DNA of 64,000 bases, from contig NC_087246.1 in assembly GCF_037042905.1 (NCBI RefSeq), forward strand, positions 35,650,001 to 35,714,000. The letters run 5' to 3'. Position 1 is the first letter of the stretch. Every line of letters begins with the position of its first letter. The notes beneath the pieces are model-generated. The model saw only the letters and a list, made by a program, of their open reading frames with translations. It searched no databases and had not been told where the DNA came from. Position numbers and translations under genes: made by a program. Of the stretch, positions 34,516 through 63,566 are shown in pieces. Source of the DNA: Lytechinus pictus. Lineage: Eukaryota.

Positions 34516-34601
34516 TTATACTCCACCGCCCGGTGGGCCTGGAGGTGTGTTTGGTCTAGGTGTGTTTGACGGTCCAGAAGGTGGCAGGGCTTGACGTATT
34601 C
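34516..34601 (-). CDS. Unassigned secreted 6-Cys protein, paralog A, last exon (Pro-rich tail)
   Basis: acccag|GA; in phase 1 reads RIRQALPPSGPSNTPRPNTPPGPPGGGV-TAA; homologous to the last exons of B, C and D. Confidence 0.8.
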
Positions 34602-36498
34602 CTGGGTACAGATATTAACAAAAGGTAAAACATATTCAAACTTTACGAGGTTTGTTGCTGATATTTTGGTTGTTTGATTTCTGCAGGAAGGCCCACAAAA
34701 GTGGACTACATTTTTGTACAAAGCAATATTACGTGTGAAATAAAAATCGGAATCATCAATGTCATCACACCAGTAAAATTATTTAGTTTTTCTTCTTAAT
34801 TTCTACTCCCTGTGCCGTAATAAATGATAATATAGAAAATAGTGATTAGATTGAAATACCGGCATTTATAATTCCTTATTCGCGAGGTGATATCAACAAT
34901 GATGATAATAAAATAAACAATACTTTATAAATAGATCACAAAGTTATTAAAATGTGTACTTTAGAAAGAATAAGATGATTTGTATAAAGGATGTTTTTGA
35001 AAATAGAAATCAAACTACCAAAAGGAATTCGAGATTTCTGCCACAATTTCTAAACACCTATATGTTCTTGAAACTTGCAGAAACCTAGAAATTACCTTTC
35101 TAAATTGTAAAAAATAAATAAATAACAGGCCCTAACAAACTTAAGGGGAAAATGTTAGTTAATTCATAAAAGATGGAGTTAGAATTATTTATGATGACGT
35201 TGTACTTCCAAATGCGCTGGCAGTGTCTGCACGCTGCCCTTATCGACAATTTTGGAGTAATTATTTTGAAGAAAGCATGTATTATACAATAAGATCAGGC
35301 CGAAATATGAATATGCATTTTTTTTTGGGGGGGGTTAACCTTTTCCCCATTTAACCTAAGATTTATGTAGTTATCTCCCCATTCAGTTGATTCTTGCTTG
35401 TTTTCTGTTACTGTGTTTAACCTAGACAGCAAATGGTGTTTGTCAGGTGTCCTTGGAATAACTCATCACGATTAACTTTCATGTAGCTCTGTTTTTCTCC
35501 AATTAACTGTCGTTCAGGTACACACTCAGACACACACACATCCAAACACACCCTCAGACACCCACACACATACTGACAATACATGAAATATATAGATGGG
35601 GTTGGTGTGCGTGAGGGTGTGTATGTTTGTGCGTGTCAGTGCTCGTGCGTGTACGCACTTATCGAAAACGAGGACACACACCAAACCGAGGACGCCCCGG
35701 TACAGGACTATTGAGTGAATAACAGTTAATGAGTGATATTTTGATAGCCATGGTTTAGTATAAACTTGGATCAACTTAGACCACACTTTTATGGAATGCC
35801 AGTTGTCAACTGATACATCAATCCAAATTATTCTTATCCTGCTGGAAAGAATTGTCAAAAAATAATTGACACTTAAAAGGGGAAGAATAGGAAAATACAA
35901 ACATATTATGAATTTCGATGAATTACTTGATACAGTATAATTGCCATGAATGTGGAAGAAATATTATGAAGCCCAGCATTCCATAGAAGTGTTATTCATA
36001 ATTTTAGTTTAGACTAGGGTTAAACCTAGATTTTATTATTAGAACAGCATTCACTAAGCCCTCGATTCGCAACCATCTACAATGTCCTCGGTTGGATAGG
36101 AAATGGCCAAGATTTCTGGCATAGACATGTATGGTTTGCAATCATATCCGAATTTAACTTACCGACGATAAATGGTCAAGGATAACTATAATTTTCTTTG
36201 GCTTCATCACACAAACCTCTATTTATTTTTTTCAGATTATCTTATCATATAATGATTTTCAAAATGTTAATTGCTATATTATGACAACCCAATGTTTTAA
36301 ATAAGTTTTGAGAACGCGAGAAAATAAACTGGAATGAAATCACTAGGGGTGTAACCCCTTACACTAATATGGCTACAATGCTTCCTATGCCAAAAATTAC
36401 GGTACCTATCACACATAAACTGTATGGGATATGTTATGCAATTTTTGCTGTTTGGTTGTAACACCTAAAAAAAGAGGAAATGCAGTTATGGCACTTAC

Positions 36499-36780
36499 GT
36501 TCGCAAAGGTCAACAGTTCGTCCAAGATTGCATATATGCTCAAAAGCGGCGCATGGGTCACGTAATTGGATGACGTCGGTGCCGCTTGAGGAGCACAATC
36601 TCATGTCCCTCGCCATCCTGAACAGTGTTAGCATGTATCGATCACGGCTCCAGTCCCTATCCTTCTCATAGACTTCCTTTAGGACTTTCCAGTTGCAGAA
36701 ACCATATCCCTCATCTATCTTCTCGTAGTTATAATAGGGGCAAATCCGCTTTAGACGGCCCATGGGATTGTACATCGGCC
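36499..36780 (-). CDS. Paralog A, six-cysteine domain exon
   Basis: tttcag|GG ... C|gtaagt, 282 nt, phase 1/1; GPMYNPMGRLKRICPYYNYEKIDEGYGFCNWKVLKEVYEKDRDW...LC...DPCAAFEHICNLGRTVDLCE. Confidence 0.85.
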
Positions 36781-37477
36781 CTGAAAGTTTACAATAAGAA
36801 ATTATGAACATCAGTTGCAACGAGTAATTCTAGAATCAAACGGTTTAAAAATACAATGTCCATAATCTCCCTATCGTAAAAGTTAATGAAAATGTAAAAA
36901 AGAATAACTAATGGTCCATAAAGACGAGGCTAATTTGAATTGACCGCGTTTAGGGGATATGGATTGCCTTATTCTGATCTCGAATGATTAAAATGAGACC
37001 CTGCCAGAGGATTTCCTGTTAACATTGGACAAAAACTGAGCAAGATGATCGACAATTGCCTCTTTCTCTCTTAATTTCTTTTATATATTTTTCTCTTCTC
37101 CCTGTTCATTTTCGTTTTCTTTCTCTCTCCTTTTAAATACCCTTCCCTTTCTTTCCATTCCCCCTTTCCCTTCTCCTTTTTTTTATTGTGGCGGGGGAGG
37201 GGGGAGGCCCTTCGACCCCAATTTACCTTCACCTGTGTCTTATCACAGTCTTATAAACTTGACATCTGTTTAATACAAAACTTACTTATCTGTATCAATG
37301 CGGTTTCCCGTTGCAATTGTCAAAATAAGATTGTTATGCGTTATCTTATTTCATTTTGGTGATTCGGAACAATAACGCATTGTTCGGAGCATCTGTCACG
37401 AATGCGTGATCACATGAAATTATATAATGTATAGGTGTGAGTCAAGAGGGGTGTTGATGGGGACAGGATAGACTTGC

Positions 37478-37586
37478 CTGGACCATAACCGCCGTATCTA
37501 CCTCCGTATCCTCCGTATATGCCATAAAATCCGTATACTTGCGAAAAGCTGATCACAATAAAGAGACACGAGGTCAAAGTCTTCAT
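37478..37586 (-). CDS. Paralog A, signal peptide plus Gly/Tyr-rich exon (ATG in this exon); protein 158 aa
   Basis: tatcag|AAC ATG; MKTLTSCLFIVISFSQVYGFYGIYGGYGGRYGGYGP; donor G|gcaagt (GC-AG intron), phase 1. Confidence 0.8.
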
Positions 37587-38412
37587 GTTCTGATATAGGA
37601 AAAAGAGAAATAGTTTACCTGTATAAATTCGTTTTACAGCTCAATATTCATCTTATTTCTATTTTTCGGAAACAAGCCCAAATTATTATTTAATGTAATT
37701 ATTTGCTCAATGGGATTTACTTATAGTTTACATTTTAAAGAAACATATAAATCTCAAATATGGCAAATGTTTTGACAATTGGCATATCTAATAACATTCA
37801 GGTAAGATCTTGCTTGCATATAGCAGTGATAAATCTGTTCTGTTTTTTTTTTGTTAAAGAGAATAGAAACGTTGTTGAGAGGGTTATGTTAAAATAGTGA
37901 AATATAAGACTGACACGTAATTGATATAATAGTAACATAACTTCCTTGTATTATGGCTATTCTCCATTACAGCCACATAAATTTGAGTATAACCAATTAT
38001 TTTACCCTACCCTATTACTGCAAAGTATAGGTGTTGGTGAACACACGATTCGGCAGGCATGCTATAAAGGACTTTTCAACCCTGTTCTTTAGTATAGAGT
38101 TCTCCCTCCACGACACAAAACGGAGAACGTAGACAAATGTACTGTCGAATGCCCTTCATGCAATGAACAACCAAGAAGTCTTTGTCGAATATTGGTGAAT
38201 CAAAAGAGTAGTTTCGTCCCACACTCTGGATAATCGACATGTCTTGCATTTTTTTGTCAACTCCGAAACTTACTACGAAACTGTTTTTCCGGATTATTAA
38301 CTTTCAACAAAGACTTATCGGCTGTCCTTTGTCATTTGGTATTTTTAATAATTCTCTGTGTTCTTATATCCGTCGTGCGTAGCGATTCGAAACTGCCTAG
38401 TATGATCTTACA

Positions 38413-38703
38413 CCGGGAGAGCGTTTTAGGAAAGGACTTTGTTTTCCAACAGGTCCCATTTTATCCGATCGTTAACATAGTAATATTGCTTCTCAGCCAA
38501 TCAAAATCTAGGAAAGTTATCACATCAGGGGCCCGTTTCATAAAGAGTAACAACTGTTGTAACTTTGCCATTATGGCAACTACCATGGCAACCTTGATTT
38601 TGATTGGCTGCTGAGCCCTGTTACCATGGTAATTGCCATAATTGCAAAGTTACAACAGTTGGAAGTCCTTTATGAAACAGGCTCCAGACAAGGCTCCCCT
38701 AGT
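38413..38703. mobile_element. Nested MITEs of the GGG.CCGTTTCATAAA-terminus family (other members 40416-40543, 41471-41622, 46707-46883, 50614-50795)
   Basis: Inner element GGGGCCCGTTTCATAAAG ... CTTTATGAAACAGGCTCC (~38527-38687) sits inside an outer GGGAGAGCGTTTT ... GGCTCCCC element. Similar termini at the other listed copies. Confidence 0.65.
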
Positions 38704-39035
38704 TGGAAAGTGGCAAATATAACTGAACGTCTCGACTAAGAACGTTGGTGAAAGGCTGTGATTCGAGTGGTTCAAATAAGAATCCTCATTACTCAAAGCC
38801 TAAAGGGCAAGTATAGCCCTACAAAACTGTTTTTTTTTTTTTTTTATAAACAGAGGAAAGTCAAACAAGTATAATGCTGAAAATTCATCTTAAACGAGAG
38901 ATAATATACTATTTGAAATAACGTTATAGTTTTGGCCGGTCTAGAGTCAGTTTCTGGATGTGTCTGCGGCATTATGCTTGTGCACTGTAAAAGGCCAATA
39001 AAGCAAAGGAAAGGCTTGTAAACCACCAGACTTAC

Positions 39036-39175
39036 CGCTGCAGTGACTGTACCAAGATGTAGATTCGCTACGAATTCAATTATTAAAAATAGCTTTCCAG
39101 TTCAAAACCTTAAGACGTTAATTCAACTATTACCCAGAGTCGAATGGTGATCCCCACCGATCAATGGCATTTATA
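39036..39175 (-). promoter_or_regulatory. Paralog A core promoter and non-coding first exon
   Basis: GGTATAAAT (TATA at 39175) with TCACCATT about 30 nt downstream. Exon ends GTC ACT GCA GCG|gtaagt, in the position of the coding micro-exon of B, C and D. Confidence 0.6.
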
Positions 39176-40799
39176 CCAGTATACCATTCCACAAGGTGCG
39201 AAATATTATCCATTGGGCCTGTATTTGAGAAAGCCTCTCCACTTACTACTACGCCTGCTAGCCGTGCTTGATCTGAACATTTCGGCTAACATTACTCCTA
39301 ATATCTAACCCACGCCAGACTTCATGAACTATTGACCGTTAAAGAAACGAAAACAAAAATGACATAAAATGCGATCCATATATCGTAATGGGGGATATAT
39401 TTCTTTGTAAATCGGATTTTTATTAGAAAAATAGAAGGGATATCATTTAAGAAGACATATAGGAGTACACGGGGAGTACATTGACAGAATGACCAAAGAA
39501 CATCGGACCACGACTTTAACCACTTTCTGTTGCTGTAAGTTCGTGATTCCTTTCGACCAGGGACATCTGACGTTTATCTTTATGGACATACGACATGATG
39601 GTGATATTGAATCATCTTTAACATATGGTCACACAAGAATATAGATTTAAACCTAAGTTTGAAGAAAAAATTGTACATTTCATGAATTATTGCACATATA
39701 GCTTTAATCAATTTAAACTATATAAAGCTTTGTATGGACATATTGGACAATAAGCTATACTATGATGTTGCTATCTAATCATGTTCTTATAAAAATGGTC
39801 GCACAATGATATAAATTAAAGTTTAAAGCATGTCTTTTGTTTTGATAAATTCACCCCAAAAGTGCAAGTCATTATTCCAATTCGTTCCTAGAATATAATA
39901 ATACATGTTTCTAAAACTTCCCAACGATGCAATGAAAATATCTTTGCAGCACCAACCCCGCGAATGTCGGGAAGAGTGAGTGCCACCGTGTCTGAAAACA
40001 TTGCGAGGTTCCCAGACAAGGTGGTCAGCATTTTTTTGGACTCCCAAATAGCAACCACTACACAGACGCTTTCTAGAACGTAGAACATCTCTTGAAAATA
40101 GCCCTTCGTGACAAAGAAGTCTTTGTCGAAAATCGGTGAATCAAACAGCAGTGTCATTCGTGACTATAGTCTCTGGACAAACGACATATTTTACGACAAT
40201 CAGCTGTCCCGATTTACCAATTTTTGACAAAGTAGTATTAGCAGATCATCGTAATTTGACGGGCATTTTAAATATATTTACTATGTTGCAGAATCCTTCC
40301 CCGTTTTAATTGCGAAAACCCGCATGACGTCACAGCGACCGTAGTTTATCTGAGACGTAGCAGATACGAATCCTTTGGCGAGATATGGACTTAAAGTATG
40401 TCAAACAGCCTTTCTGGGGAGCGTTTCATTAAAAAGTTATCAGGTCTGACAACTTTCCTTGATTGTGATTGGCCGAGAGGCAGTGTTACCATAGTAACTG
40501 TCGGATAAAACAGTACTTGTCCTTTCATAAAACGCTCCCCTGGTCTCCAAGTGGACTCCGCAACGTATCAGAGATGTATCTGAGACTTTGCAAGGACATT
40601 GCAGATTCGCTAAGACATCTCAGCAATCAGGGATGTAAATAGTCTCCGCGATGTCTATGCGTAAATAATGGAGACGTCTCGGAGCCCAGATTCCTCTTAA
40701 GGGTCTGTCTCACCAAAGGAGACGTCTCTACAACATCCCAGAGACAATCGCTGACATGTTTCAAACGTAAAAAAAAAATCTTCTTTCTAAACAAGGAAA

Positions 40800-40907
40800 A
40801 CCATAACCGCCGTATCTACCTCCGTATCCTCCGTATATGCCATAAAATCCATATACTTGCGAAAAGCTGATCACAATAAAAAGACACGAGGTCAAAGTCT
40901 TCATATT
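40800..40907 (-). pseudogene. Orphan duplicate of paralog A signal/Gly-Tyr exon (homology with upstream intron extends to ~41065)
   Basis: cttcag|AAT ATG; MKTLTSCLFIVISFSQVYGFYGIYGGYGGRYGGYG is identical at protein level to A. The GCAAGT donor is missing and no dedicated downstream exons were found. Confidence 0.75.
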
Positions 40908-41815
40908 CTGAAGAAGAAAAAAGAAGAAGAATAGTTTACTTAAATTCGTTCTACAGCGCAATAATCATCTTATTTTTGTCTATTTTTCGGAAACAGGCCC
41001 AAATGATTATTTGGTATAACTATTTGCTAAATGGGATTTATTTGCAATTTACACTTATATATTTACACGTCGCTAGAGACAAGGTGGTAAGTAATTTGCA
41101 CTGCAGTCGCGGGGACGATGCTGCAAATTCTCCGAGTAGTCGCTATGCCTCATCGGAGTTTTTTCGTAGTTAAAGCTAAGTCCCAAAAATGTTTTTGAGA
41201 CATCACAGCGACTACTTGGAGACTTTGTAGCGATATCCCCGTTTCCGTCGGGCAAATCGCTTGTCAGCTTGTTTCGAGACGTCTCCGAGATGTCGAAGAG
41301 ACATGCATGCCTTTGTTTTGAACGACAAAACCATTTTTAAAGTTGGAGACTGAAGTACCTGAGATGTCGCAGAGGTGATCGTCGCGCGTGATCCTTTCCG
41401 GCAAAGCGTCATCGAATAGAGTACTGATGATGGTCACTGCTCGTGATGTCACTTAATCTTTGGAGAGGATCAGGGGACCGTTTCATGAAAGTTGTAAGCA
41501 CTGACAAGTTGTCTTTCTCCGACAGTTACCATAGTAACAGTCAGAGCCAGTGCCTTTCAGCCAATCAAAACCAAGGATTTCACTTAAATTGTCAGCACTG
41601 ACAACTTTCATGAAACACCCACTAGATTGTACAGCATCATCGAATAATACTGGAGCCTTACACTCACAAAGGCCGGGAACGACCAACACATCATCTTTTT
41701 TTTAATCATCCAACGCTTGATTATTTCCATTAACTCGAAGTGACTTGGAGAGAGTGTAATACTTTGGTATCGAGGTATCCTTGAGATTTAATGTGCTAAT
41801 TAAGATAATTATAGC

Positions 41816-41939
41816 CATGGGCGGAAATCTCTCCTTAAAGGTAGGGGGGACACAATTGAGTTTTCCGTGTTTATGTTCTACAGAATTACTAACTCAAACA
41901 CACACACATACATATGTATATATATATATATAACCAAAG

Positions 41940-41978
<39 letters not shown>

Positions 41979-44009
41979 TTATAGCCATTTTTCGAAGAGG
42001 GTATATTCCTAACTAAAGACGAAAGGCCTCAATAAATAATGCGAGCGCGAAGCGCGAGCCCAAATATGTTGATATTTCATAAATTGTGACCTGGAAATTG
42101 AACATTCTGAATATTTGTTGTGATCATGAACTAAATTCGAACCTACCTAAACCATTAATGCGAGCGCGAAGCGCGAGCTGAAAGTTGTTGGTTTTCCAAC
42201 CTAAAAACTAGACATTCGTAACACTTTTTCAAATCATAAACAGGATAGGAATCTAATAAAATAATGCTAGATCGAAGCGCTAGCTGAAGGTTTTCGATTT
42301 TCCAACCCATAAACTGGACATTCGTAACATGTTTTCAAATCATGAACAGGATAGGAATTTAACTAAATAATAGATGCGAGCGCGAACTGAAAATTGTTGA
42401 TTTTCCAACCTAAATACTGGACATTCATAGCACTTTAAAAAGAATATGAACAGAATATGAATCTAAACAATTAATGTGAGCGCGAAGCGGGAGCTGGAAG
42501 TTTTTGGATTTTCCAACCTAAATACTAAACATTCTTAGTACTTAAAAAAAAGTATGAACAGGATAGGAATCTAAACAATTAATGCGAGCACGAAGTAAGA
42601 GGTGAAAGTTTGTATTCTCCAACCTAATAACTGGACAATCGTCACACTTTTTCATATCATGAACATGATAAGAATTGTACTAAACAATATTAGATTCGAG
42701 CCCGAAGTGTGTGCTGAAGATATGTCATTTCCGGCCTACAAATTTGTATTATTAGCATATTTTAAAATCAATGACAGGGTAGCTATCTAACACAATTTTA
42801 ATTTGTGTGAGCGCGAAGCGTATCCTGTTTTTTTTTCCGACCAAAAAAAGTCATCTTCTTTTCACCTTATAGCAATAAACGGGATAGTATCTGACTTAAC
42901 CATATTACTGATGCGAGCGTGAAGCAAAAAATGATTTTTTTTATATTCAGATCTGAAAACTGGATCTTTCAAGCAATTTTGAAATAAAGAACAAGCAGTT
43001 TATCTCAATAAGCAATGCGAGCGCAAAGCGCGAGCTAATTTTTTTTTAGATTTTAACCTACAAATTATGAAAAAGATGGATATCTTCCTAAATAAATGAT
43101 TTGATTTTATATATTTCGATCTAAAAAGTGAAAAAAAATTACCACGTTTTGAAATAAAGAGATGGCTGTGTATTGATGCAAAGCGCGAGCAAATTCTTTA
43201 TTTTTATACTATGACCTGAAAGTTTTCTTTTTTTCCACTTATTCCCCTCCCCTTCCATCATTTAATTTTCTTCCTCGTCCTATCTTCTTATTTTTTCTCC
43301 TCACCTTCCTATTTTGCACCGCCAATAGGGGGCGGACCGCCGCTTCGCCCCCTTGATCTACCTATGATGACCCTCCCGCGGCAGGAATTTTGTGTAAAAA
43401 TGGAATATAAAAGTCTCGTTAATAGAGTATTCAAAAACAAATTTTGGGGGATTAGACATAGTTAAAATTCACTGCGAAGGATTATTCATAACTGATGAAA
43501 ACTATTCTTTTTACTGAGTACGCGAACAATGAAAATATTATTATATTCCAAGTAAATTTGGAATAAAGGGAAAATGAATTGGTTAAACAAAGATATGTTT
43601 TTACGGGTTATGGAACATTATCGTCTACCATCTATGCACTAAATTTACTTATAAGCGTCCAGAGGCGATTTTCTTTTTTCGTCATTTTTATTAGTTATGA
43701 AATTGACAATGGCCATCGATGTCATCAATGTCATCACTCTTTGGCTGGCATATAGGGCTAGATGCGAGTACGAGAATAGTCGGGCCGGTATGCCTTTTGT
43801 TTTCCTATCCAAGTTCTTGACAAAAACTATCTGTTTACATATATTTCGAAATTCGAGGATACATGTGTATAATTTCGATTTTGAATTATATATTTTTTTC
43901 CATAATAAAAGACCACAAATAGTAGGGGGGACATTTGATATTATGTCCCCCCCTTTCCAAAATGGTAGGGGGACGCGTCCCCCCTGTCCCCCTGGGATTT
44001 CCGCCCATG
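41816..44009. mobile_element. Non-autonomous hAT-type element (~2.2 kb) with internal ~100-120-bp tandem array
   Basis: Perfect 14-bp TIR CATGGGCGGAAATC / GATTTCCGCCCATG and perfect 8-bp TSD ATTATAGC (41808-41815, 44010-44017). Units with GCGAGCGCGAAGCGCGAGC repeat from ~42040 to ~43200. Confidence 0.85.
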
Positions 44010-46128: not shown

Positions 46129-46187
46129 CAACAATATAATATGATATAATATAATATAATACAATATCATTTCTTCTCCCCACTACG

Positions 46188-46218
<31 letters not shown>

Positions 46219-47897
46219 GGGGGGGGGGGGGCTTTCCCGCCCCGTAGTTATGCTACTCTCCATATATGTGTGTATAATATGTCTCCATTGTTATGAAAAT
46301 AGTTGAAGCAGTGAATATTAAATAAGTTGTTAATCCATTTTATATTTCTTAGAGGACAAAATTTGAATGAAAGTGGGGGATATGACATCATCAGTTTGCT
46401 CATTGAATTTTTTAATGAAGACAGGCATATTCTTTGAAATGTCATTACTTCGTTATTCCTTTTGATGACATTTTAAATTTTCATTTGTATGATTTTTTTT
46501 CTGTTCAAGTCATATTATTTATATTTTCACACCCACGCACATCTCCATTTCTGCTATTGATCATTAACATATCTGTAATTGCTCTCCCCTGTCGTTCTCT
46601 CTCTCTCTCCATCTCCCCCGCTACGTCACCCATGCCCATCACGCATCTTTTCTCCCACTGTCTCTCTCTCCCCCTCCCATCATCCCCCCTTCTTTCAAAA
46701 TCTCTCCTGGGTGGTGTTTCATAAAGCTGTTCGTAAAGTTACGCACAACTTTACGAACGACTGGAACATGTTCTTATACATAAATCAGCTACATAGGGAT
46801 ATATCATATAGCACAAGAAAGGGTCACCAGTCGTGCGTAAAGTCGTTCGTAACTTACGAACAGCTTTATGAAACGGGCCCCTGATCTCATGTGCATATTC
46901 GTGTACAGTCCAACGGTGTACACACCTACAAAAGCACTTCGTGGATAACGCATTATACAAGAAAAGAAACTGTCCCACGTGATTATATACATCACACTTT
47001 TTCAATTTATTGTATAAACAAAAAATAATAAACTAAGACAGGTATAAACATCATTCTAAACGTAAATTCTCCCTCGTTTCCCTCAATGGAGAAGCTCTTA
47101 AGATTGGAAATAAGTAAGCTTGCTGTGGAAAGTGTTAAAGCTCTTTCATTAAAACACTACGATGTCGATAATCTAATCTGGGTTTTAAATGTAAAAATCC
47201 AGTAAGAATTGATGTGCATGAATGGCATACAAGAATGTGTTTTCTTGGGAATGTAGAACACATCCCATTGTTTATAAATTCGTTGATAGGATGCTTTCGC
47301 CTCCACGAGATAGGATGCTTTCGCCTCCACGACACATGACGTATTCAAGAACATAGTAAATGTATTGGGAATGCGCGTCAAGTGACAATGAACAGCTGGG
47401 AAGCCTTTGTTGAGTGAACATTGGTGACCCGGAAGAACAGTTTCGTCCTAAGTTTTGGAGCTGACAAAAAATTGCAAATATTTTGTCGTTTGTCCAGAAT
47501 CCAGGACGAAACTGCCGTTTTGATTCGCAACTTTTCGACAAAGACTTCTTGGTTTATTCATTGTCATGAAAGACATTTGGCAATAATTTTATATGTTCTT
47601 GAAAACGTCGTGCGTCGTGCAGCGAAAACAGCCATTTATCTGTAAGGGAATGCCACATCTGAACAATTTGCCACCATATGCCTGTTTAACGTATGTCCAG
47701 GCGTTATATCGTTTACTCCCATCATAGTAATCCCTTCCATTTTCGTGAAGACCGCGTTAACGGAAGAGAGGCTACCTTGACTGTTCTGTGATCTTTTTCA
47801 ACTGCATTAAAGCATGTTAGGGAATCGGACTTCAACATTTTCTACATGCATAATATTAAGTTAAGTTGAACGAATGTGTATATCTCCGACACGAGTT

Positions 47898-47992
47898 TTA
47901 TATACCACGGCCACGAGGTGTTGCAGGAGGTTGTGGTCGCGGGGTGGGTGCAGGAGCAGCTGGAGGTCGTGGCCTGGCTCGGGCTCGTAGAG
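47898..47992 (-). CDS. Paralog B, last exon (Pro/Arg-rich tail)
   Basis: ctttag|CT; TLRARARPRPPAAPAPTPRPQPPATPRGRGI-TAA. Confidence 0.82.
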
Positions 47993-48598: not shown

Positions 48599-48895
48599 TT
48601 GAACAATAATCAACTGTTCGACCACTGCAAGCAGCATCGAAGCCCTGGCAAGGATCATGGATTGGAATTATTTGGTTCGCCTCTAGGTGACCGCCGACGA
48701 AGCACAACAGGCCGCTTCGAGATATCCCGTAGAGTTCCCGAAATGCATGTCGATCGTGGCGGCTGAAATCTTTCACCTTGTCGAATACCTCTTTCAGGAC
48801 CTTCCAATAGCACCTGCCATGCCCTTCATCCCACCTCTCTTTTTGATATATATAACAGTACTGACTGAAGCGGGCGCCTGGGTTGTGTCCTCCTC
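48599..48895 (-). CDS. Paralog B, six-cysteine domain exon
   Basis: tttcag|GA ... A|gtgagt, 297 nt, phase 1/1; GGGHNPGARFSQYCYIYQKERWDEGHGRCYWKVLKEVFDKVKDF...LC...DPCQGFDAACSGRTVDYCS. Confidence 0.85.
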
Positions 48896-50306: not shown

Positions 50307-50409
50307 CTCCAAACCCTCCATACATGCCATAGCCTCTGTGTCCGCCAAACCCCTGAGAAACACAGCAACCTATCATAACAGACAAGGAGACTCCAAGGAG
50401 AAGTCCTTT
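50307..50409 (-). CDS. Paralog B, signal peptide plus Gly/Tyr-rich exon
   Basis: tcacag|AAA ... G|gtaact; KGLLLGVSLSVMIGCCVSQGFGGHRGYGMYGGFG, phase 0/1. Confidence 0.8.
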
Positions 50410-51143: not shown

Positions 51144-51155
51144 CATTGTAGTCAT
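51144..51155 (-). CDS. Paralog B, 4-codon first coding exon (MTTM); protein 168 aa
   Basis: AAAATG ACT ACA ATG|gtaagt, phase 0, downstream of a TATA/Inr pair. Confidence 0.7.
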
Positions 51156-54877: not shown

Positions 54878-55130
54878 TAAATAAAAAAAATTAAAACATA
54901 GTAATTTATACAATAACAGAAGAGGATTAATACGAAATAATGACAAGCCAAAAGAAATACGCTGTACGGACTGTTGTCAGAAGTACTATTATGTTGAATG
55001 ATAAATAAATAAAAAAATTAAAACATAGTAATTTATACAATAACAGAAGAGGATTAATACGAAATAATGACAAGCCAAAAGAAATACGCTGTACGGACTG
55101 TTGTCAGAAGTACTATTATGTTGAATGATA
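54878..55130. repeat. Near-perfect 127-bp tandem duplication in paralog C intron 1
   Basis: TTAAAACATAGTAATTTATACAATAACAGAAGAGG...ATGTTGAATGATA occurs twice with period 127. Confidence 0.9.
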
Positions 55131-55164
55131 TAATATTATTACTACTCGTATGGTATCATTTCAG

Positions 55165-55261
55165 AAGCTATCGCTCCTTGCTCTCTGTCTATCTCTTTTG
55201 GTTTCTGCATCTGTTTCACAAAATTGGGACACATTTGGTGAATATGGATTCGGTGGATTTG
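55165..55261 (+). CDS. Paralog C, signal peptide plus Gly/aromatic-rich exon
   Basis: tttcag|AAG ... G|gtgagt; KLSLLALCLSLLVSASVSQNWDTFGEYGFGGF, phase 0/1. Confidence 0.82.
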
Positions 55262-56020
55262 GTGAGTACATCATTACATGATATTGACTGAACTTGAGGG
55301 ATATACCACTTATATTTCCCAAAATATTATCATGATCGCCCGAGTCGTGACGAGGGCAATGTGTGTAATGTAAGTGAGGGGATCATTTATGGTTTCTCCA
55401 GTAAATTAATGCAAGGAAGTGTTATCTATTCTTCATTACCTATAGTTCCATTTCAGAATACAGTCTTTGTCTGTAGTTTTGTCATATCCAATAAATATTT
55501 TTAGGAGAGTTGTTTATGCAATTAGGTGCTTAGAGGAATATACTTGCATTAGTCTGGGATTGTATTTTCGAAACAGTTATTGAGACAGTCAGTGTTACAT
55601 TCTCGAACCATTTCAGTAAAAGTGCCAATGTATAAATGTATAAGTACCAACAACTCTGTATTTTTCTAGGCTGATGATTTGGTGTATTTACTTATAACAT
55701 GTTTTCGTCATTGTTTTTAATCCTTCAAATCAATATTGTGTCTTCCGATAAGATAAAGGCAACGCCATGTTTCCTCCTTCTCCTCCACATAACCTTCATT
55801 GATCATTGCAAGAAAACATTGGACTGCCAACTGTAAAAAAATAAAATATTATACTCCACATACTGAGAGTATGCCTTAGCTGCATGCCTGGTTGCCCCCA
55901 CCCCCTTCCCCCTCAAAAATGGGGAAAACATAATAATGAATTGCCAATCAAAATGATCAAAGTGGGTTTGTGTTTTGCTTCGTATTAAACGCCGCACATC
56001 GGATTATTACCATTTCAATC

Positions 56021-56062
<42 letters not shown>

Positions 56063-56146
56063 GGGGGGGGGGGGTTCGTTATATATAATTATATTGTTTA
56101 CGGATGATTGAATGTATGTTTTTAATGCTTCTCTCTAATTTTTTAG

Positions 56147-56431
56147 GACCAGAACTAGCCCCCGGTGCTCGCATGGCTAATTACTGTAATCTGTTTAACA
56201 AGGAGAAGCATGACCAAGGAAAGGGATGCAATGGGCAGGTCTTAAAGAAAGTTTATGATAAAGACAAGGATATTAACCAAAATGAATCTATGTTAAGGAT
56301 CTTCAGACTGGCGAGGAGAGGGGCATTTTGTTACAAGGAAGGAGCTCATATTGTGACTATAAGATCACCCTGTCATGCAATGGAAATTTCTTGTCGTCCA
56401 TATTCCCGTAGTTTGGTCGATAACTGTTGGA
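56147..56431 (+). CDS. Paralog C, six-cysteine domain exon
   Basis: ttttag|GA ... A|gtgagt, 285 nt, phase 1/1; GPELAPGARMANYCNLFNKEKHDQGKGCNGQVLKKVYDKDKDI...ARRGAFCY...SPCHAMEISCR...VDNCW. Confidence 0.85.
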
Positions 56432-57606
56432 GTGAGTACATTTTTATGTTTTTTGTTTTATTTCTGCACTCTTAACAATGTTGGGCAATACTGTCCACAC
56501 GACAATCGGTTAAAACTTTATCAAATTCTGGGTGGTCTGAAACCAATTACGTGTGCTTTGGATGAACACTGCACAGCATCGGTCGAAAGCTACCCAGAGG
56601 TGGATACATTTTTTAAACAAATTGTTACGTAGATAGTATGTTGCCCAACATTTTAAGAGTGAAATGGGTTTCCGCATAATCGAGATTATTTGATGGGTGC
56701 TGTGTGTGATAGTCATTTTGCGATTTGGAAATCGTTTTTCTTTCTCTTTCTTTCCCCACGACGTACACCGCGTAATATCCGTTAGATACACACACAACGA
56801 GTTGTGTCCTTATCTTATGACAGTTTTTACGCATTATCAGTAGGTTAGAAACTCCGATTTTTATCCGGGGCCTGTGAGGGAACAGAATAGGATACCCGTA
56901 TAGCATATCCAATCATTTTTCATAAACATTTACCACGTTTACTGACAATCGGAAGGGAACCGTCTGGGAACGGTCCGATGCCCGCTCGTTGGCCGTACGA
57001 TGTCCTTTCCAGCACCGATATGGCTTTCTTCGTCCTAACGAATATTAATCTGACCCCGAATGTATAGTGTCAAATTGCCTGCCTGAAATATATTTTGTGT
57101 GAGATGTAGATATCACATGTGATTTCTAATTATTTCTATTTATCAAAGTAAAATAGAGGGAAATGATTCATTGCCACACAGCGTGTCTAATTACAATGAC
57201 TAATGTGGTGAAAAGGCATGACATGTACATATATGACGTATAGTTTTGTTGCCTTATGATAGCAATTTATTTAATACTTTGCAACCCCCCCCCCCCCCCA
57301 AGAACAAAACAAAAAAAATGAGAAAAACGATGTAATTTTATACTCTTCATATGCATTACCTTTCGTAAGGGAAGGTGCAAATTTACACGCTTTGAAGCGA
57401 ATGCATGCACCATAAAAGGTGCAAAGCTGCACTATTATTTATCACTATTTTCGTTTAATTCCGGGTTTCTATTTAAGGTAAAATATTAAACCTCTTTGTA
57501 CGATTAAGACACAGCCACAGCTGTTATCAAATCTAATATGCGTGTGCTATAATATACAAGGCATGACTCTAAACATTTTTCTGTCTTTGTTATTTTTCCG
57601 TAACAG

Positions 57607-57695
57607 AAGTGACTCGTCCACCAACTCGTCGACCAGACACTCCTGGCCCTAATCCACCTCAGGCCCCCGAAACCCCACGTGGACGAGGCATCTAA
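57607..57695 (+). CDS. Paralog C, last exon (Pro-rich tail)
   Basis: taacag|AA; KVTRPPTRRPDTPGPNPPQAPETPRGRGI-TAA. Confidence 0.82.
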
Positions 57696-59493
57696 CCATC
57701 CATCGGAAAAGGAGCGTTGGACACAAAGACTCGGTTTGATGATAGAGAGTGGCGACAGAGTTCGATGTGGCTTTCAAGTAACATCGAATTCCTGTCATGG
57801 CTTACTTTACTACTCAGCTGAACATTATTACAAGAATCGGGAGGACAATTTGTGTTCAGCAAATACTAGCAGAGCTTCGAAGTTCATCGGTAATGCTCCA
57901 GTCCGATCGACCAACAAAACTCTCACAAATTAGGCTCCAAGCCGACCGATAGCATGCCATTTGAAATAAGGTGGTAGATTTGATTGGCATTGAGTCGGTC
58001 TCGTTGGTGTGACTGAAACAGATCTGAGGCGGTTCTGTATCTTTACCATGGCGGCCCATATGCAAGGTGATCCAGGGATCGAATCAAGATTACCACCTGG
58101 GTATTTTGGATGCACTTTTACCGTCGAGAGGGATGTTTGGAAAGGAATGCTACCGTCCCGATGACTCAAGAACGCCGTTTATACCACTCGCCTTTCTCTA
58201 GTTAGCATTTTTACTCCCCCTTGTTGAAGTAATATAGTTTTGGCTCAGATAGGCTATGATTAACATATAGGTTTCATGCTGAGTTTAAAGCCGGTCAGAC
58301 AGTAGGCTACGTTTAGATGTTGTTGTAAAGAAAGAAACCTTTTACAGTATTTGTTTTTAATGTGAATATTTTGAAGAAAAAAATAAAAGTAACAATCATA
58401 TAATACTGGTCATGTGACATTAATTATATAAGTTATATTCTTCTTAGTCGTAAAGATATACTTTTCTTTTTGACTTCGAGTTCATAATCTCACGAGATCC
58501 TGCATTAGCTTAGACCTAACAGGCATCTATCAACTTTATTCGAGAAGAAATGATAGAATGGGCGATGGAGCGATTTTAGACAACGAACAAATGAAAAAGG
58601 AAAGAATAAAGAGGAAAAATTATAATGTGATACAGATTAAGAGAGAAAGAAAACAAGAGAGAGAGAGAGAGAAGGAAAGAGAGAACATCTTAGAAGGGAT
58701 GGAGAACATAGTTTCTTAATAAAACTGCTGCGTCTTTCAGCAAACTTTGGCGTTTCACATCTGATTTCCCACATTCTCATCATTTTGTCTATTCTTGGAA
58801 AGAAGGGAGGAAAAATACTCTGTGGAAGATTACAGCCAAAAATACGTGGCAGAAACTTTTGATGAAATTGCTTACGGATGGAGGAAGCAGAAAAAAAAAT
58901 GCAAGAACACTCGGCGCTTCGGGCAGGTTGACTCATGAAGACGGACAGTCAACCTGTCCGAAACGTCGAGTCAATCTAGGACTTACCACATGGGGCACGG
59001 CAAACCCGTTCCACAAGTAACCAGGATGTACATACAACTACTTTGTGAAATTGAGCAAAACTTTGGAATATTATACCTTTCTTATTTTGATGAAAATTTT
59101 CACTTCATATGCGTGTTTAATTTTTCGCTTTTTATCAGAATCAGCTTTTTTTTAAATGGGGTGGACGGGACCTTACACATTTATATTTTGTGATTAAAAA
59201 AAAAAACATGTAAGCAAAATAAAACGGTCCACCAAATTGTACCAATTTGGCTTTTCCGTTTATCCCCTGTGACAAAAGGGCACATGATAAAATGTTCAAC
59301 GGCATAGATGCCGTGGCCGGGTATCGAACCGCAAGCTTTATTGTATCATGCACTTGAGGCCACTCTGCTAAGGCACCTCATGATAAGTTACACGGAAAAA
59401 AATCAAGACAAATACATACGATGACTCACACTTCACACACATTTACTAGTATGTAATTTGATGATCGGGGACTCACCATTAATCTACAAAGTG

Positions 59494-59658
59494 CACTGTA
59501 AAAATGAAGTGCTAATTTAGCACTTACGGAGCTTGTATAGTGACTGCACTACGAGTGTTGATTTTCTAGTTCAAATTCAAACTAGAAAATCAGCACTCGT
59601 AGTGCAGTCACTATACAAGCACTGTAAGTGCTAAATTAGCACTTTATTTTTTACAGTA
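59494..59658. mobile_element. Near-perfect palindromic MITE with CACTGTAAAAA terminus
   Basis: Arms AAGTGCTAATTTAGCACTTAC..GCTTGTATAGTGACTGCACTACGAGTG.TGATTTTCTAGTT and their reverse complement surround a very short spacer. Confidence 0.75.
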
Positions 59659-61722
59659 TGGGGACTTGTTGCATACACTAAAAAAAAAAAAAAAATCGAA
59701 TTTTATCCAAGAAACGGACTCAGTTCCAAAAGTAACGAGAGAATAGTTCGCTGACGCTCCCTACCCCAAATACACTCAACCTGAATTCAATTGGCACTAC
59801 GGGAACTTTTTACAAATCACATGTTTACTATGAAGCGGTTTATGAGGAGTTGATTGGTTTGGTAATCTGGATTGGGAACGTCTCCGGTTGTAAGTCCCCG
59901 GTAAAATGTAAGAATATCCTCAGAATTAGGTCATTACAAACTCACACACGCCACGCGCCCTCACACACATACACCCACCCACCCTCCCACACGCACGTAC
60001 ACACGAACCAAACCCTCACATATACACCCCCACCCATACACCAGTTTATCCACAAATTCCACGTTTCTTTTTGTGAGTCGATTATGTACTTATGGTATGT
60101 AATTTTAAAATGGAATAAGCATTAATTGCCGAATAACCCCAAACTATATTTCCTTGTCCTAGGAATGTAAAGAGGCAATATGTTAACAATATCAATTAAA
60201 AATGTTCTGAAAGGACATGAGAAGGAATTAAGCTCAATTCTTACATTATTTGCTTTAGCCAATGACGTATTTTGATGGACGAAAGATGGTTTTCTGTTAC
60301 TCTATTTTGTATCGCATGGCAAACCAATTCCTATCTAACTCGTGATAAAAATCAAGAGTATTACTCACAGACCTATTGTATAACTCTTTCTACCGTTTCC
60401 TCGATCCTTCTCCCTCAATTTTTTTCTATATATTTTCTCATGTTACAGCCGTGTTCCCCTCTGTACCATTTGTATTCACAATTTCCACTTCTTTACATTT
60501 TCAAATATCTTGTACTCACACAAACAAATCACAAAGTTCCCATCCGTTTTTAGATCTCTATTGCTGACAAGCAAATATACATTTACGTCCACATTTTATC
60601 ATCCATGCACGGACTTAGGTGTCTCGTGATGTACAGTATAAAAAAAAATTATTTTTTTTACAGAGTTACGCTGTAGAACAAATTACCTAATACTACATAC
60701 ATGTATATTTATTTTTCAACACACAGAAACAAATATTCAATAAATATGAACAATTCATCACGTGAACGGTATACTCGGCAATAATTATTATGTATATTTT
60801 TTTACATCATCATTTTATATAAGATCATGTCAATGCTTAACGCAATGTTATCACTACTTTAAAATACAATTCACTTATTGAATCTTTCCGTTTAAAAAAT
60901 ACCATATGCACAATGTAAAAGCAAAATATATATGGTCTCACTACTACTGAAGGTTTCCATGGTGAAGAAGAAGAGTGTAGTGGGTTTCACGGTACACCGT
61001 GTACCACTTGCCCACGAAAGATGCATGGTGTACCGTGAAACCCTCTACACTCATTATCTCACTGATTTGGGTATTTCTTCAGATCGCTGGGTGATGGTGC
61101 ATGAAACATATAATAGTAGAGGGTTTTCGCTTCCACGCTTCCATTCAACATGTTCAAGAACAACGTGAAAGTATTGAAAAAGCCCGTCAAATGACGATGA
61201 ACAGCTAGGGTCTTTGTCTAAAATTCTTGAATGGAACCGGAACAGCAATTGCATCGTAAGTTTCGGAGCTGCCAAAAAAAATGCAAGCATGTCATCTTTC
61301 CAGGTTCCAAGTTTCAACGAGCCTCGGCAAAGACTGCATTGTCATGAAGGGGATTTGACAATATATAGATTCTCTACTTTCCAGAAAGAGTCTGCTTAGC
61401 TGTTGCGAAAAATCCTTAACGAAAACCTGGTCAATCCATTGTCAGCTAAACGTCATACGGGATTTTTCGCAACAGCTAAGCAGACACTTTCTGGATAATA
61501 AACCGACCGATTCTCTTGCATAATGTCAAATGACATACCATCGATCGAGTTCCAATCGGATTTATTGGTGTGCCCGTAGCATAAATCATATCACATCATT
61601 GATGTGATTTCATTGAAGGAATCCAACCTCTGTAAAGTGAACTTTGGTGGCATGCCGGATGGCATGACAATCCAAATGACGACTGTAGAGAAGTTTTGGT
61701 AAACGAAATCGCTGTAAAATGT

Positions 61723-61823
61723 TTACATTCCCCAGCCATACCAGCCCGGCGGGCCTGGAACAGGAGGATTTGGTCGATTGGTCACTGCAGGACCGGCTGG
61801 TGGAGGATTCTGCTGAGCTGCCC
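61723..61823 (-). CDS. Paralog D, last exon (Pro-rich tail)
   Basis: ttttag|GG; RAAQQNPPPAGPAVTNRPNPPVPGPPGWYGWGM-TAA. Confidence 0.8.
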
Positions 61824-62099
61824 CTAAAATGAGATAGAAAATAGTAAGAGAATATTGTGAAGCTTAAGTTAGAACAGTCAAATCATAAAGGAGTCATGGT
61901 TATGCGTATAATCGAAAAAGGAGCACTCTTTGTCTAACCTTTTGTAAAATGTTGCCAATGCAAAAACTTCATCACAATTTGAAAATAGAAATCTACAGAA
62001 TAGTCCGTTGTCTCTCTTGCTAAGATTCAAGGTGTTAAGTGAGCCTAATAAAGCACTTGGATCAACTTAAGTGTTTGAAAGAAAATATCGTACTTATAC

Positions 62100-62396
62100 T
62101 CCAGCAGCTATCAATCCTTGGTGGACTCTGTTGGATAAAAGGGGGGCCGCGACAGGCAAGTTGCATAGCATCACAGGCTCCTCTTATATTCATCACTTGT
62201 GGTCCGTTGGCATAGCAGAGCACTCCCCGTCTTGCCCGTCTAAAGAGCTGCCTCATGAACCCATCGTGGTAGATATCCTTATCTTTGTCGTAGACTTCCT
62301 CGAGAACATCCCTGTTGCAGCGACCCTCGTCGAACATTTCCGAACCAAACAAGCCACAGTACTCGGACATTCGACCGTGTGGATTATAGCCTGGGC
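62100..62396 (-). CDS. Paralog D, six-cysteine domain exon
   Basis: atacag|GC ... A|gtataa, 297 nt, phase 1/1; GPGYNPHGRMSEYCGLFGSEMFDEGRCNRDVLEEVYDKDKDI...ARRGVLCY...GACDAMQLACR...IDSCW. Confidence 0.83.
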
Positions 62397-63475
62397 CTGT
62401 ATTTTTTTTTTTTTTGGGGGGGGGGAAAGAAATCAGTCATACTTCTCCTCGCTTTTGCAATATTGGCTGCAATCTGCCATTTATATACGCCATGGCATCA
62501 CTACAGGCATAGGAGGGAGCCCTTTAAAAGGGGACCTCGAGGGAGTTTATAATACTCATAACATTAACATAATAATAACATTCTTAATCTAACGTGACAA
62601 GACCATGATGGGTTTATAAAATATTTCTGCACCTATTCAATTCAGGTTCGACAACTATACTTCATAAAAAGAAATAACATCAAATTATTAAGAAAAACAG
62701 GAGATCAATATACATTCTAAAAATATAAAGAAATGACGGGAAATGTTCCATTATTTGGAGATGAAGCTTTAATCTATGAAAAAGTTAATCAATTTTATGG
62801 AAATTATGTAAATTATGCAAATACGCTATACAATGGCTTTAATTCGATGATAATAGGTCACTCATTGAATTAAAAAGCGAGGCAAACATATTGCGTTCAA
62901 TGATGTGTTTAAGTTGTTAAAATAGTCCGTTACTTCGTATGCAGTTTTTCATCTGGAAAAAAAATCGAAGTTTCACTTAGATGATTTAATAGTGCATTCT
63001 TAAATCGTATTGTACTGGCAATTATCAAATTCTCCTCGAACTTAAACGTTAGTTTTCCATTTGCGTTTGACAAGAAAACTCAATACACATGAAATTGTTG
63101 TTATTTTTTTGTATTAAAGGATGTTGATACCTTAAAGGCACAGTTTAACATTAATTTTAATTTGAAAGATTTGAGCTGCAGGGTTCCACTTGTGATATTT
63201 TATAAGAATGAACATGATGAAGACAAGTAAAACTAAAATCGCGCCCCAAAACCATTATTTAGTGCATCAAAACATATGACTATAAAGTGACAAGAAACGC
63301 CATATCATGCACCTCACATAATTATATGTGTTATATATCTCCTCTAGTAGATGATTTTTAAGCCACAGAAATCTTAAAATTGCCTGCAGGAATTTGATTT
63401 CTTTTAAAAGATGTGAACAGTATTAAGCACAACATGAATCAAAATAAATGAAGTAACACATTTTAGTATACTTGC

Positions 63476-63566
63476 CCCAATAGCCATCATACATGCCGTA
63501 CATTCCGTATACTTGAGAGAACGAGGTACATATTATCACAGATAAACAGAGAGATATTACTGTATT
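63476..63566 (-). CDS. Paralog D, signal peptide plus Gly/Tyr-rich exon
   Basis: tttcag|AAT ... G|gcaagt (GC donor); NTVISLCLSVIICTSFSQVYGMYGMYDGYW, phase 0/1. Confidence 0.8.

What the first reader, a model, noticed from the sequence alone, without database searches (positions are those of the whole stretch)
34516..63566. Exon-by-exon conflicting relationships among paralogs (mosaic genes)
Exon 2 groups A+D (start N, SFSQVYG.YG.Y, GC donor) against B+C (start K, VSQ, end GGFG, GT donor). Exon 4 groups the same way: A+D have RPN.P and PGPPG, B+C end TPRGRGI. Exon 3 instead groups A+B (DEG.G.C.WKVLKEV, DPC..F, GRTVD.C) against C+D (VYDKDKDI, ARRG..CY..G, C.AM...CR, D.CW). These two unrooted four-taxon splits are incompatible. 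Inference: the Cys-domain exon was exchanged or gene-converted between neighbours, so two core types occur with each of two flank types.
Basis: partly seen in the sequence, partly recalled or inferred. Interest (0 to 1): 0.72.

Follow-up and report, generated by a model that had tools for sequence, protein, structure and literature searches.

The report
Mosaic paralogs in urchin gene cluster
Four neighbouring sea-urchin genes for small secreted cysteine-rich proteins probably exchanged their middle exon or its flanks long ago, which is an ordinary kind of gene conversion, and this genome on its own shows it only weakly.

Summary
The window is Lytechinus pictus. It holds four intact tandem genes, A to D, which NCBI lists as "uncharacterized". 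Each encodes a signal peptide plus a Gly/Tyr-rich stretch (exon 2), a six-cysteine domain of about 95 residues (exon 3, phase-1 introns on both sides) and a Pro-rich tail (exon 4).

As phylogenetic characters they are weaker than claimed:
- Several are ancestral states: DEG.G.C.WKVLKEV, RPN.P, the K start, VSQ and GRGI.
- Others are Lytechinus-only derived states: SFSQVYG, the GC donor, DPC..F and GRTVD.C.
- In L. pictus alone, exon 3 favours AB|CD and the flanks carry no signal.

All four genes have positional orthologs in S. purpuratus, one of them unannotated there.
- Core: AB|CD is best and AD|BC is rejected (AU 0.028).
- Flanks: AD|BC is best and AB|CD is rejected (AU 0.043).
- Site patterns are 17:5:6 in the core against 3:11:0 in the flanks (Fisher 0.002 to 0.03, depending on alignment).

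With all eight genes the flanks no longer reject AB|CD (AU 0.23).

Verdict: an old exchange between paralogs is likely, about 55%, but not proven. It would be an ordinary phenomenon in an unnamed echinoid family.

The parts
34516..34601 (-). Gene A (LOC135153296) exon 4: Pro-rich tail ...RPNTPPGPPGGGV, stop included
   Evidence: Spliced model equals P0037
36499..36780 (-). Gene A exon 3: six-Cys domain, phase-1 introns on both sides
   Evidence: profile hit E 3e-45
37478..37589 (-). Gene A exon 2: start codon at 37584-37586, signal peptide, Gly/Tyr-rich stretch, GC donor (G|GCAAGT)
   Evidence: GC donor also in L. variegatus A
40800..41056 (-). Solo partial copy of gene A exon 2 plus upstream intron. 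It has no usable donor and is absent from the collinear L. variegatus locus
   Evidence: 87% identity to 37482-37735; sequence; collinearity gap
47898..47992 (-). Gene B (LOC129272338) exon 4: ...PRPQPPATPRGRGI, stop included
   Evidence: equals P0005
48599..48895 (-). Gene B exon 3: six-Cys domain, very diverged (GGHL insertion, conserved CY and CW lost)
   Evidence: branch length 1.26
50307..50409 (-). Gene B exon 2, GT donor
51144..51155 (-). Gene B exon 1 coding part (MTTM)
   Evidence: sequence and P0005
53543..53554 (+). Gene C (LOC129272329) exon 1 coding part (MTAS)
   Evidence: and P0033
55165..55261 (+). Gene C exon 2, GT donor
56147..56431 (+). Gene C exon 3: six-Cys domain
57607..57695 (+). 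Gene C exon 4: ...PNPPQAPETPRGRGI, stop included
61723..61823 (-). Gene D (LOC129272318) exon 4: ...RPNPPVPGPPGWYGWGM, stop included
   Evidence: equals P0035
62094..62396 (-). Gene D exon 3: six-Cys domain. The donor lies 6 nt downstream of the ancestral one, adding Ser-Ile, as in the S. purpuratus ortholog
63476..63566 (-). Gene D exon 2, GC donor (G|GCAAGT)
   Evidence: GC donor also in L. variegatus D
63992..64000 (-). Gene D exon 1 coding part (M)IAT; the ATG lies just beyond the window end
   Evidence: sequence and P0035

Best explanation
The region is a tandem array of four old paralogs, ordered MFS gene - A - B - C (inverted) - D - further family members. They belong to an unnamed, echinoid-restricted family of small secreted proteins. 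Exon 2 encodes the signal peptide and a Gly/Tyr-rich stretch. Exon 3 encodes one compact helical domain with six cysteines. Exon 4 encodes a Pro-rich tail. Exon 3 lies between two phase-1 introns, so it can be replaced without breaking the reading frame.

All four genes were already separate before Lytechinus and Strongylocentrotus diverged. The Cys-domain exon is closest between the adjacent genes A and B. Exons 2 and 4 are closest between A and D, and less clearly between B and C. The most likely cause is one interlocus gene conversion, or a double crossover in introns 2 and 3. It would have involved a tract of about 0.3-0.4 kb carrying exon 3, between neighbours A and B, before the two genera split. 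Equivalently, the flanks may have been converted instead. Later short-tract exchanges between A and D in the Lytechinus stem are possible.

Shown: the gene models, one-to-one orthology, conserved gene order, and different best trees for core and flanks. Inferred: that the difference reflects an exchange rather than homoplasy, and its direction, size and date.
For: Orthology and synteny:
- S. purpuratus locus L025 carries O1(+), Sp532 (=D)(+), Sp530 (=C)(-) and Sp533 (=B)(+). It also carries an unannotated intact fourth gene, SpA, in the position of A, followed by an MFS gene. An exon of that MFS gene matches window ~28.9 kb.
- A and SpA share a two-codon deletion and the junction YGPG|PM.NP.

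Core (exon 3):
- Nucleotide ML puts AB|CD first and rejects AD|BC: eight genes delta lnL 10, AU 0.018-0.026; S. purpuratus alone AU 0.028; L. pictus alone AU 0.034.
- The SpA-Sp533 alignment runs 402 nt at 75% identity and includes about 85-90 nt of intron 2. Sp532 and Sp530 do not share that intron stretch.

Flanks (exons 2+4):
- The best tree is AD|BC at protein level (support 78/85) and at nucleotide level.
- S. purpuratus alone rejects AB|CD (delta lnL 6.2, AU 0.043).
- In a parametric bootstrap under AB|CD, 0 of 200 replicates reached the observed 3.4 lnL advantage for AD|BC.

Core against flanks in S. purpuratus:
- Site patterns are 17-18:5-7:6 in the core and 2-3:11:0 in the flanks, Fisher p=0.0016-0.0017.
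- With exons aligned separately under ten settings, Fisher p=0.009-0.03.
- A MaxChi scan without preset boundaries picks exactly exon 3 (p=0.056).

Silent sites: A-D dS is 0.36 in the flanks against 1.20 in the core. A-B dS is 1.27 in the flanks against 0.84 in the core.

Intron phases are 1-1 around exon 3 in all eight genes.
Against: - The flanks are short (about 60 codons) and low in complexity (Gly/Tyr and Pro runs), so models fit them poorly.
- With all eight genes, the AU test on the flanks does not reject AB|CD (p=0.23-0.27).
- Protein-level AU tests under a site-heterogeneous model reject neither split clearly. For exon 3, the A+D grouping gets p=0.04-0.06. For the flanks, AB|CD gets p=0.31.
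- The parametric bootstrap is a test known to be liberal.
- The L. pictus flanks have no nucleotide signal (delta lnL 0.05).
- No pair of paralogs gives a significant fragment in a GENECONV-like permutation scan after correction. The best within-species pair is SpA-Sp533 in exon 3: p=0.004 raw, 0.11 corrected.
- The A-D similarity does not extend into introns.
- Lytechinus A and B sit on very long branches (0.89 and 1.26 changes per site), so their shared residues could be parallel change.
Confidence: 0.55

Rival explanations
1. No exchange took place. The four genes arose by tandem duplication with one history, AB|CD, which fits the gene order: A next to B, C next to D. The A-D and B-C resemblances in exons 2 and 4 would then be retained ancestral states plus chance or selected parallel change in short, compositionally biased sequence.
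For: - RPNPP also occurs in Sp530 (the C ortholog) and in SpA. GRG(I/M) and P.GP. occur in outgroup paralogs. The K start and VSQ-like signal-peptide ends are general.
- GGG and GWG differ from GRG by a single nucleotide.
- AB|CD is not rejected for the flanks with eight genes (AU 0.23-0.27) or at protein level (0.31).
- The L. pictus flanks carry no signal.
- No A-D intron similarity exists.
Against: - In S. purpuratus the flank patterns are 11 AD|BC against 0 AC|BD (binomial p=0.0005). Under AB|CD both patterns are homoplasies and should be about equal.
- Several of these sites are third codon positions, and A-D dS in the flanks is only 0.36. Convergence at protein level does not predict either.
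- The similarity continues about 19 nt past the stop codon.
- S. purpuratus alone rejects AB|CD for the flanks (AU 0.043).
Confidence: 0.3
2. The cause is recurrent, lineage-specific short-tract gene conversion (concerted evolution), not one old exon swap. A and D would keep exchanging short patches in exons 2 and 4, and A and B in exon 3, separately in Lytechinus and in Strongylocentrotus.
For: - Lytechinus A and D share derived states that both S. purpuratus orthologs lack. These are the GC donor of intron 2 (also in L. variegatus), F and V in SFSQVYG, and CCA GGC CCN CCG GGC in exon 4.
- S. purpuratus A and D share (I/L)VAFCL and near-identical 3' ends.
- Quartet counts for A-D flanks are species 8 against cross 1. 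Branch lengths there predict about 1:1.
- In the protein flank tree, Lytechinus A pairs with Lytechinus D, and SpA pairs with Sp532, both weakly (60/85 and 46/71).
- Lytechinus A and B share DPC..F, GRTVD.C and the loss of CY and CW, which SpA and Sp533 lack. Counts are species 19 against cross 3.
Against: - In nucleotide trees orthologs pair up in both partitions. The 'species-wise' topologies are worse: flanks delta lnL 5.4, core 4.8. Neither is rejected.
- The 8:1 count gives p~0.02 before correction for 12 comparisons.
- The A-B excess (19:3) is what the long Lytechinus branches predict, about 4:1.
- The asparagine codon at the start of exon 2 differs between L. pictus A (AAC) and D (AAT), and L. 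variegatus D has GAT.
- No intron similarity exists between L. pictus A and D.
Confidence: 0.15

Closest known systems
Interlocus (ectopic) gene conversion in tandem gene families, such as globin, opsin and MHC genes (from established knowledge)
   Same: The paralogs are linked. An internal tract of a few hundred bases has a different closest relative than the rest of the gene. In S. purpuratus the tract reaches into the adjoining intron.
   Different: The event is old and eroded. Silent sites are near saturation in L. pictus, no breakpoints can be mapped, and a GENECONV-like scan finds no conversion tract between paralogs after correction.
Exon shuffling of symmetrical phase 1-1 domain exons in secreted animal proteins (Patthy's rule; established knowledge)
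   Same: Exon 3 equals one folded domain (AF2 pLDDT 88). It is flanked by phase-1 introns in all eight genes, so it can be swapped without breaking the frame.
   Different: The module is seen only inside its own family, not in unrelated genes. What is inferred is exchange between paralogs, not the assembly of a new architecture.
Sea-urchin SpTransformer (Sp185/333) immune genes, known for mosaic 'element' patterns in clustered genes (recalled from the literature, not tested here)
   Same: A sea-urchin cluster of small, fast-evolving secreted proteins with Gly-rich parts and hints of recombination between members.
   Different: The two share no sequence relationship that I know of. Sp185/333 proteins lack a cysteine domain and have two exons. 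Here there are three coding exons plus a short first exon, with a six-Cys domain. No expression or immune data are available.
Saposin-like / NK-lysin fold
   Same: A small helical domain with six cysteines. Weak structural rows: granulysin Z 3.9, NK-lysin 3.3, saposin D 3.3.
   Different: The Z scores are far below the tool's own noise level for helical proteins. The cysteine spacing differs and the model has a beta hairpin. Foldseek found no PDB match at E<=1 and the Atlas search gave TM<=0.42. This is not a member.

Membership tests
Interlocus gene conversion / recombinant (mosaic) paralogs | Donor and acceptor are paralogs on the same chromosome | tested here: met
   Four genes within 29 kb, in a cluster of at least 12 family members on the same contig
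Interlocus gene conversion / recombinant (mosaic) paralogs | Adjacent segments support significantly different trees | tested here: inconclusive
   S. purpuratus: core rejects AD|BC (AU 0.028) and flanks reject AB|CD (AU 0.043); Fisher 0.002-0.03. Eight genes: flanks AU 0.23. L. pictus alone: flanks carry no signal. Protein-level AU tests are not significant.
Interlocus gene conversion / recombinant (mosaic) paralogs | The tract of raised similarity includes silent or non-coding sites | tested here: met
   The SpA-Sp533 tract of 402 nt includes about 85-90 nt of intron 2. A-D flank dS is 0.36 against 1.20 in the core. This is seen only in S. purpuratus; L. pictus paralogs share no intron similarity.
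Interlocus gene conversion / recombinant (mosaic) paralogs | A fragment between paralogs is significant in a permutation test of the GENECONV type | tested here: not met
   My own implementation on 322 variable sites. Best within-species pair: SpA-Sp533, p=0.004 raw and 0.11 after Bonferroni. L. pictus A-D in exon 2: 0.0185 raw. The one corrected hit (0.042) is a cross-species pair over a conserved motif, not a conversion tract.
Exon shuffling of a symmetrical domain exon | The exon is bounded by introns of the same phase | tested here: met
   Phase 1 on both sides in all eight genes
Exon shuffling of a symmetrical domain exon | The exon corresponds to an autonomous folded domain | tested here: met
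   The AF2 model of exon 3 alone has pLDDT 88 and pTM 0.78. The six cysteines are invariant across 17 family members.
Exon shuffling of a symmetrical domain exon | The same module is found in otherwise unrelated genes | tested here: not met
   A profile search of 1.84 billion proteins returned 16 hits. All that I fetched are small proteins with the same architecture. The named ones are echinoid: Lytechinus, Strongylocentrotus and Diadema.
Any curated protein family (Pfam) or solved fold | A significant profile or structural match | tested here: not met
   No Pfam family above threshold. Foldseek against PDB gave E>1. The Atlas gave TM<=0.42. The best VIA wide score was Z 4.7.

The most novel reading that the evidence does not exclude
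Exon 3 might act as a swappable cassette. In a fast-evolving, echinoid-specific secreted family, repeated exchange of a phase 1-1 Cys-domain exon and of short flank patches among tandem genes would create combinations of 'core' and 'flank' types. That would be a diversification mode reminiscent of sea-urchin Sp185/333 immune genes, working on an orphan fold.
Probability: 0.12. Interest if true: 0.6.

Novelty: new member of a known kind. Interest (0 to 1): 0.33.

Why it matters
If the exchange is real, it is a tidy example of a domain exon between same-phase introns being exchanged among tandem paralogs. It would be preserved in two sea-urchin genera for tens of millions of years. It also draws attention to an unnamed echinoid family: more than a dozen genes per genome, a confidently modelled six-Cys helical domain with no known structural relative, and much faster change in Lytechinus than in Strongylocentrotus. 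The mechanism itself is textbook, and the statistical support is marginal. The practical gains are smaller: corrected gene models, an unannotated S. purpuratus gene, and a warning that motif sharing among four very diverged paralogs is weak evidence without orthologs.

Tried and rejected
Searches that found nothing useful:
- Pfam scan of the four Cys domains: nothing above threshold.
- Structure searches with a good model: no convincing relative in PDB by Foldseek, in the ESM Atlas, or by VIA wide.
- ESM Atlas feature search: no usable hit.
- Paper searches for LOC and XP identifiers: none.
- RNA runs for gene D: none was listed. Expression and use of the GC donor therefore rest on the NCBI models only.
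- The last homolog search added no new species.

Tests that were not significant:
- Self-comparison of the four L. pictus loci found no intron similarity apart from a shared repeat, which rules out a recent conversion.
- Protein ML with a mixture model left the exon-3 relationships unresolved. L. pictus B did not join Sp533, and AU tests were not significant.
- The GENECONV-like scan found no conversion tract between paralogs after correction.
- MaxChi on L. pictus was not significant.

Ideas considered and set aside:
- That A and B arose independently in each genus. Exon 2 and 4 orthology, the A-specific deletion and the conserved position argue against it.
- That the excess of 'species' sites for A-B in exon 3 proves conversion after the species split. 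The long Lytechinus branches alone predict about 4:1.
- That the low A-D dS in S. purpuratus proves conversion after the species split. The 3-4 times shorter S. purpuratus branches can explain it.
Full report
**Identity of the region.** A protein search with exon 3 of gene D returned a 100% match to an uncharacterized Lytechinus pictus protein and a 64% match in Strongylocentrotus purpuratus. The window is G000:C2:35650001-35714000. I read the DNA and fixed splice sites by requiring exact translation into the NCBI proteins. This gave four intact genes:
- A (-): exons 37478-37589, 36499-36780, 34516-34601
- B (-): exons 50307-50409, 48599-48895, 47898-47992
- C (+): exons 55165-55261, 56147-56431, 57607-57695
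- D (-): exons 63476-63566, 62094-62396, 61723-61823

B, C and D also have a four-residue first coding exon. Both introns are phase 1 in every gene.

**What the genes encode.** Each protein has four parts:
- a signal peptide;
- a Gly/Tyr-rich stretch;
- a domain of about 95 residues with six invariant cysteines;
- a Pro-rich tail.

No Pfam family matches. An AlphaFold2 model of exon 3, built from a 17-member alignment, is confident (pLDDT 88, pTM 0.78). It shows four to five helices and a small hairpin. No convincing relative appears in PDB or the ESM Atlas. The weak saposin and NK-lysin rows (Z 3.3-3.9) lie below the noise level. A profile search of 1.84 billion proteins found only 16 relatives. 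Every named one is echinoid, and all are annotated as uncharacterized or "secreted protein". The L. pictus genome holds at least 14 such domain exons, 12 of them in this cluster. The function is unknown. I would guess an extracellular structural or defence role, but nothing here tests that.

**Orthologs.** The S. purpuratus locus (L024/L025) carries, in order: an outgroup-type gene, Sp532 (ortholog of D), Sp530 (ortholog of C, inverted) and Sp533 (ortholog of B). About 5 kb further on lies an unannotated but intact fourth gene, SpA. Its exons are at L025 15892-15991, 17055-17342 and 17633-17719. SpA shares with L. pictus A:
- a two-codon deletion in the signal peptide;
- the junction YGPG|PM.NP;
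- the position next to an MFS transporter gene, one exon of which matches window ~28.9 kb.

The four lineages, their order and their orientation therefore predate the split of the two genera. L. variegatus has all four genes at 97-98% protein identity.

- The "A+B" motif DEG.G.C.WKVLKEV also occurs in Sp532 (the D ortholog), in SpA and in Sp533, and partly in Sp530. It is ancestral, and C and D lost it separately.
- RPN.P also occurs in Sp530 and SpA.
- GRG(I/M), P.GP., the K start and the VSQ-like end of the signal peptide also occur in outgroup paralogs.
- SFSQVYG, the N start and the GC donor are shared by Lytechinus A and D but are absent from both S. purpuratus orthologs. All four S. purpuratus donors are GT. 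The GC donors are conserved in L. variegatus.
- DPC..F, GRTVD.C and the loss of CY and CW are shared by Lytechinus A and B but are absent from SpA and Sp533.

Few of the listed motifs, then, are clean synapomorphies of the deep splits.

**Tests within the window.**
- Strict two-against-two sites in L. pictus (AB|CD: AD|BC: AC|BD) are 2:2:1 for exon-3 amino acids. At nucleotide level they are 22:14:6 in exon 3 and 2:3:3 to 2:3:4 in the flanks, by alignment. Fisher gives p=0.63 and MaxChi p=0.34.
- Nucleotide ML on the four L. pictus genes supports AB|CD for exon 3 (AU 0.034 against AD|BC). It finds no signal in the flanks.
- The loci share no intron similarity.
- Silent sites are saturated, with pS 0.7-0.9.
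- Lytechinus A and B sit on very long branches, 0.89 and 1.26 changes per site, against 0.09 and 0.17 for their S. purpuratus orthologs. The A-B grouping seen within L. pictus alone could therefore be long-branch attraction.

**Tests with orthologs.**
- Protein ML (LG+C20) leaves exon 3 unresolved. AU tests give A+B p=0.15-0.23 and A+D p=0.04-0.06. The flank tree is AD|BC with support 78/85, and AB|CD is not rejected (p=0.31).
- Nucleotide ML with eight genes: the core prefers AB|CD and rejects AD|BC (AU 0.018-0.026). The flanks prefer AD|BC, but AB|CD is not rejected (AU 0.23-0.27).
- A parametric bootstrap under AB|CD never reached the observed flank advantage: 0 of 200 replicates, 99th percentile 1.45 against 3.4 observed. 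That kind of test is liberal.
- The S. purpuratus genes are slower and so more informative. On them alone the two partitions reject each other's tree, with core AU 0.028 and flanks AU 0.043.
- S. purpuratus site patterns are 17:5:6 in the core against 3:11:0 in the flanks, Fisher p=0.0017. With exons aligned separately under ten settings, p=0.009-0.03.
- A boundary-free MaxChi scan picks exon 3 exactly (p=0.056).
- A-B similarity extends about 85-90 nt into intron 2.
- A-D dS is 0.36 in the flanks against 1.20 in the core. A-B dS is 1.27 against 0.84.

**Interpretation.** The balance favours a real difference in history between the Cys-domain exon and its flanks, at about 55%. It would have arisen before the two genera split. 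The most economical cause is conversion of a tract of about 0.3-0.4 kb holding exon 3 between the adjacent genes A and B. The phase 1-1 structure makes such an exchange harmless to the reading frame. I cannot decide the direction, or whether the flanks rather than the core were replaced. A single history with homoplasy in short, low-complexity flanks remains quite possible, at about 30%.

A third reading, at about 15%, is recurrent lineage-specific short-tract conversion. The Lytechinus-only states shared by A and D suggest it, above all the GC donor, together with a species-to-cross site count of 8:1 in the A-D flanks. It is not significant after correction, and the nucleotide trees pair orthologs rather than paralogs within a species. 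The A-B excess of 'species' sites in exon 3 (19:3) is what the long Lytechinus branches predict, about 4:1. A GENECONV-like scan found no conversion tract between paralogs after correction.

**Novelty.** Gene conversion and exon-scale mosaicism among tandem paralogs are well known. This would be one more case, in an unnamed family with an orphan fold. I found no papers on these genes. The L. variegatus ortholog P0027 shows the same units, which fits a family whose tails change by small repeats.

Noticed in passing
window 40800-41056 (-): A solo copy of gene A's exon 2 plus about 150 nt of upstream intron, 87% identical to 37482-37735. It has no usable donor and the frame runs into a stop. It lies in a stretch of about 0.8 kb (roughly 40612-41418) that is missing from the collinear L. 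variegatus locus.
   Followed up: partly
L025 15892-17719 (+) (S. purpuratus AAGJ06000002.1): An intact three-exon gene (SpA), the positional ortholog of gene A. It is not among the called genes of that assembly. A 97% identical exon-3 product exists in a Logan assembly (P0044).
   Followed up: yes
L026 about 7660-7800 (L. variegatus gene A exon 2): The L. variegatus model XP_041453718 has a frame-shifted N-terminus. It appears to use a GT inside exon 2 instead of the conserved GC donor, so it is probably a mis-annotation.
   Followed up: partly
all four genes, window and L025: Lytechinus copies sit on branches 3 to 10 times longer than their S. purpuratus orthologs, in core and flanks alike. 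Either Lytechinus evolves faster across this cluster, or the S. purpuratus copies have been homogenised. I did not resolve which.
   Followed up: no
window 38099-38392, 40051-40299, 47319-47629, 61156-61411: A short interspersed repeat (about 300 nt, 65-72% identity, in both orientations) near three of the genes and near the solo exon copy. It is the only non-coding similarity among the loci.
   Followed up: no
L025 3228-3255, 12326-12350, 17720-17745 and the Sp530 counterpart: About 25 nt directly after the stop codon (TAAACCCGTGACGGTGCTACTC-like) are conserved in all four S. purpuratus paralogs. This may be a 3' UTR element. It is not conserved in L. pictus.
   Followed up: no
window 62094-62099 (-) and L025 2616-2622: In the D lineage the first six intron bases (GTATAA) became coding (Ser-Ile) through a donor shift. 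The change is shared by L. pictus, L. variegatus and S. purpuratus.
   Followed up: yes
window 28910-29035: An exon matching the MFS-type transporter gene that also flanks the cluster in S. purpuratus (76% identity over 34 codons). The end of the cluster is therefore syntenic.
   Followed up: partly
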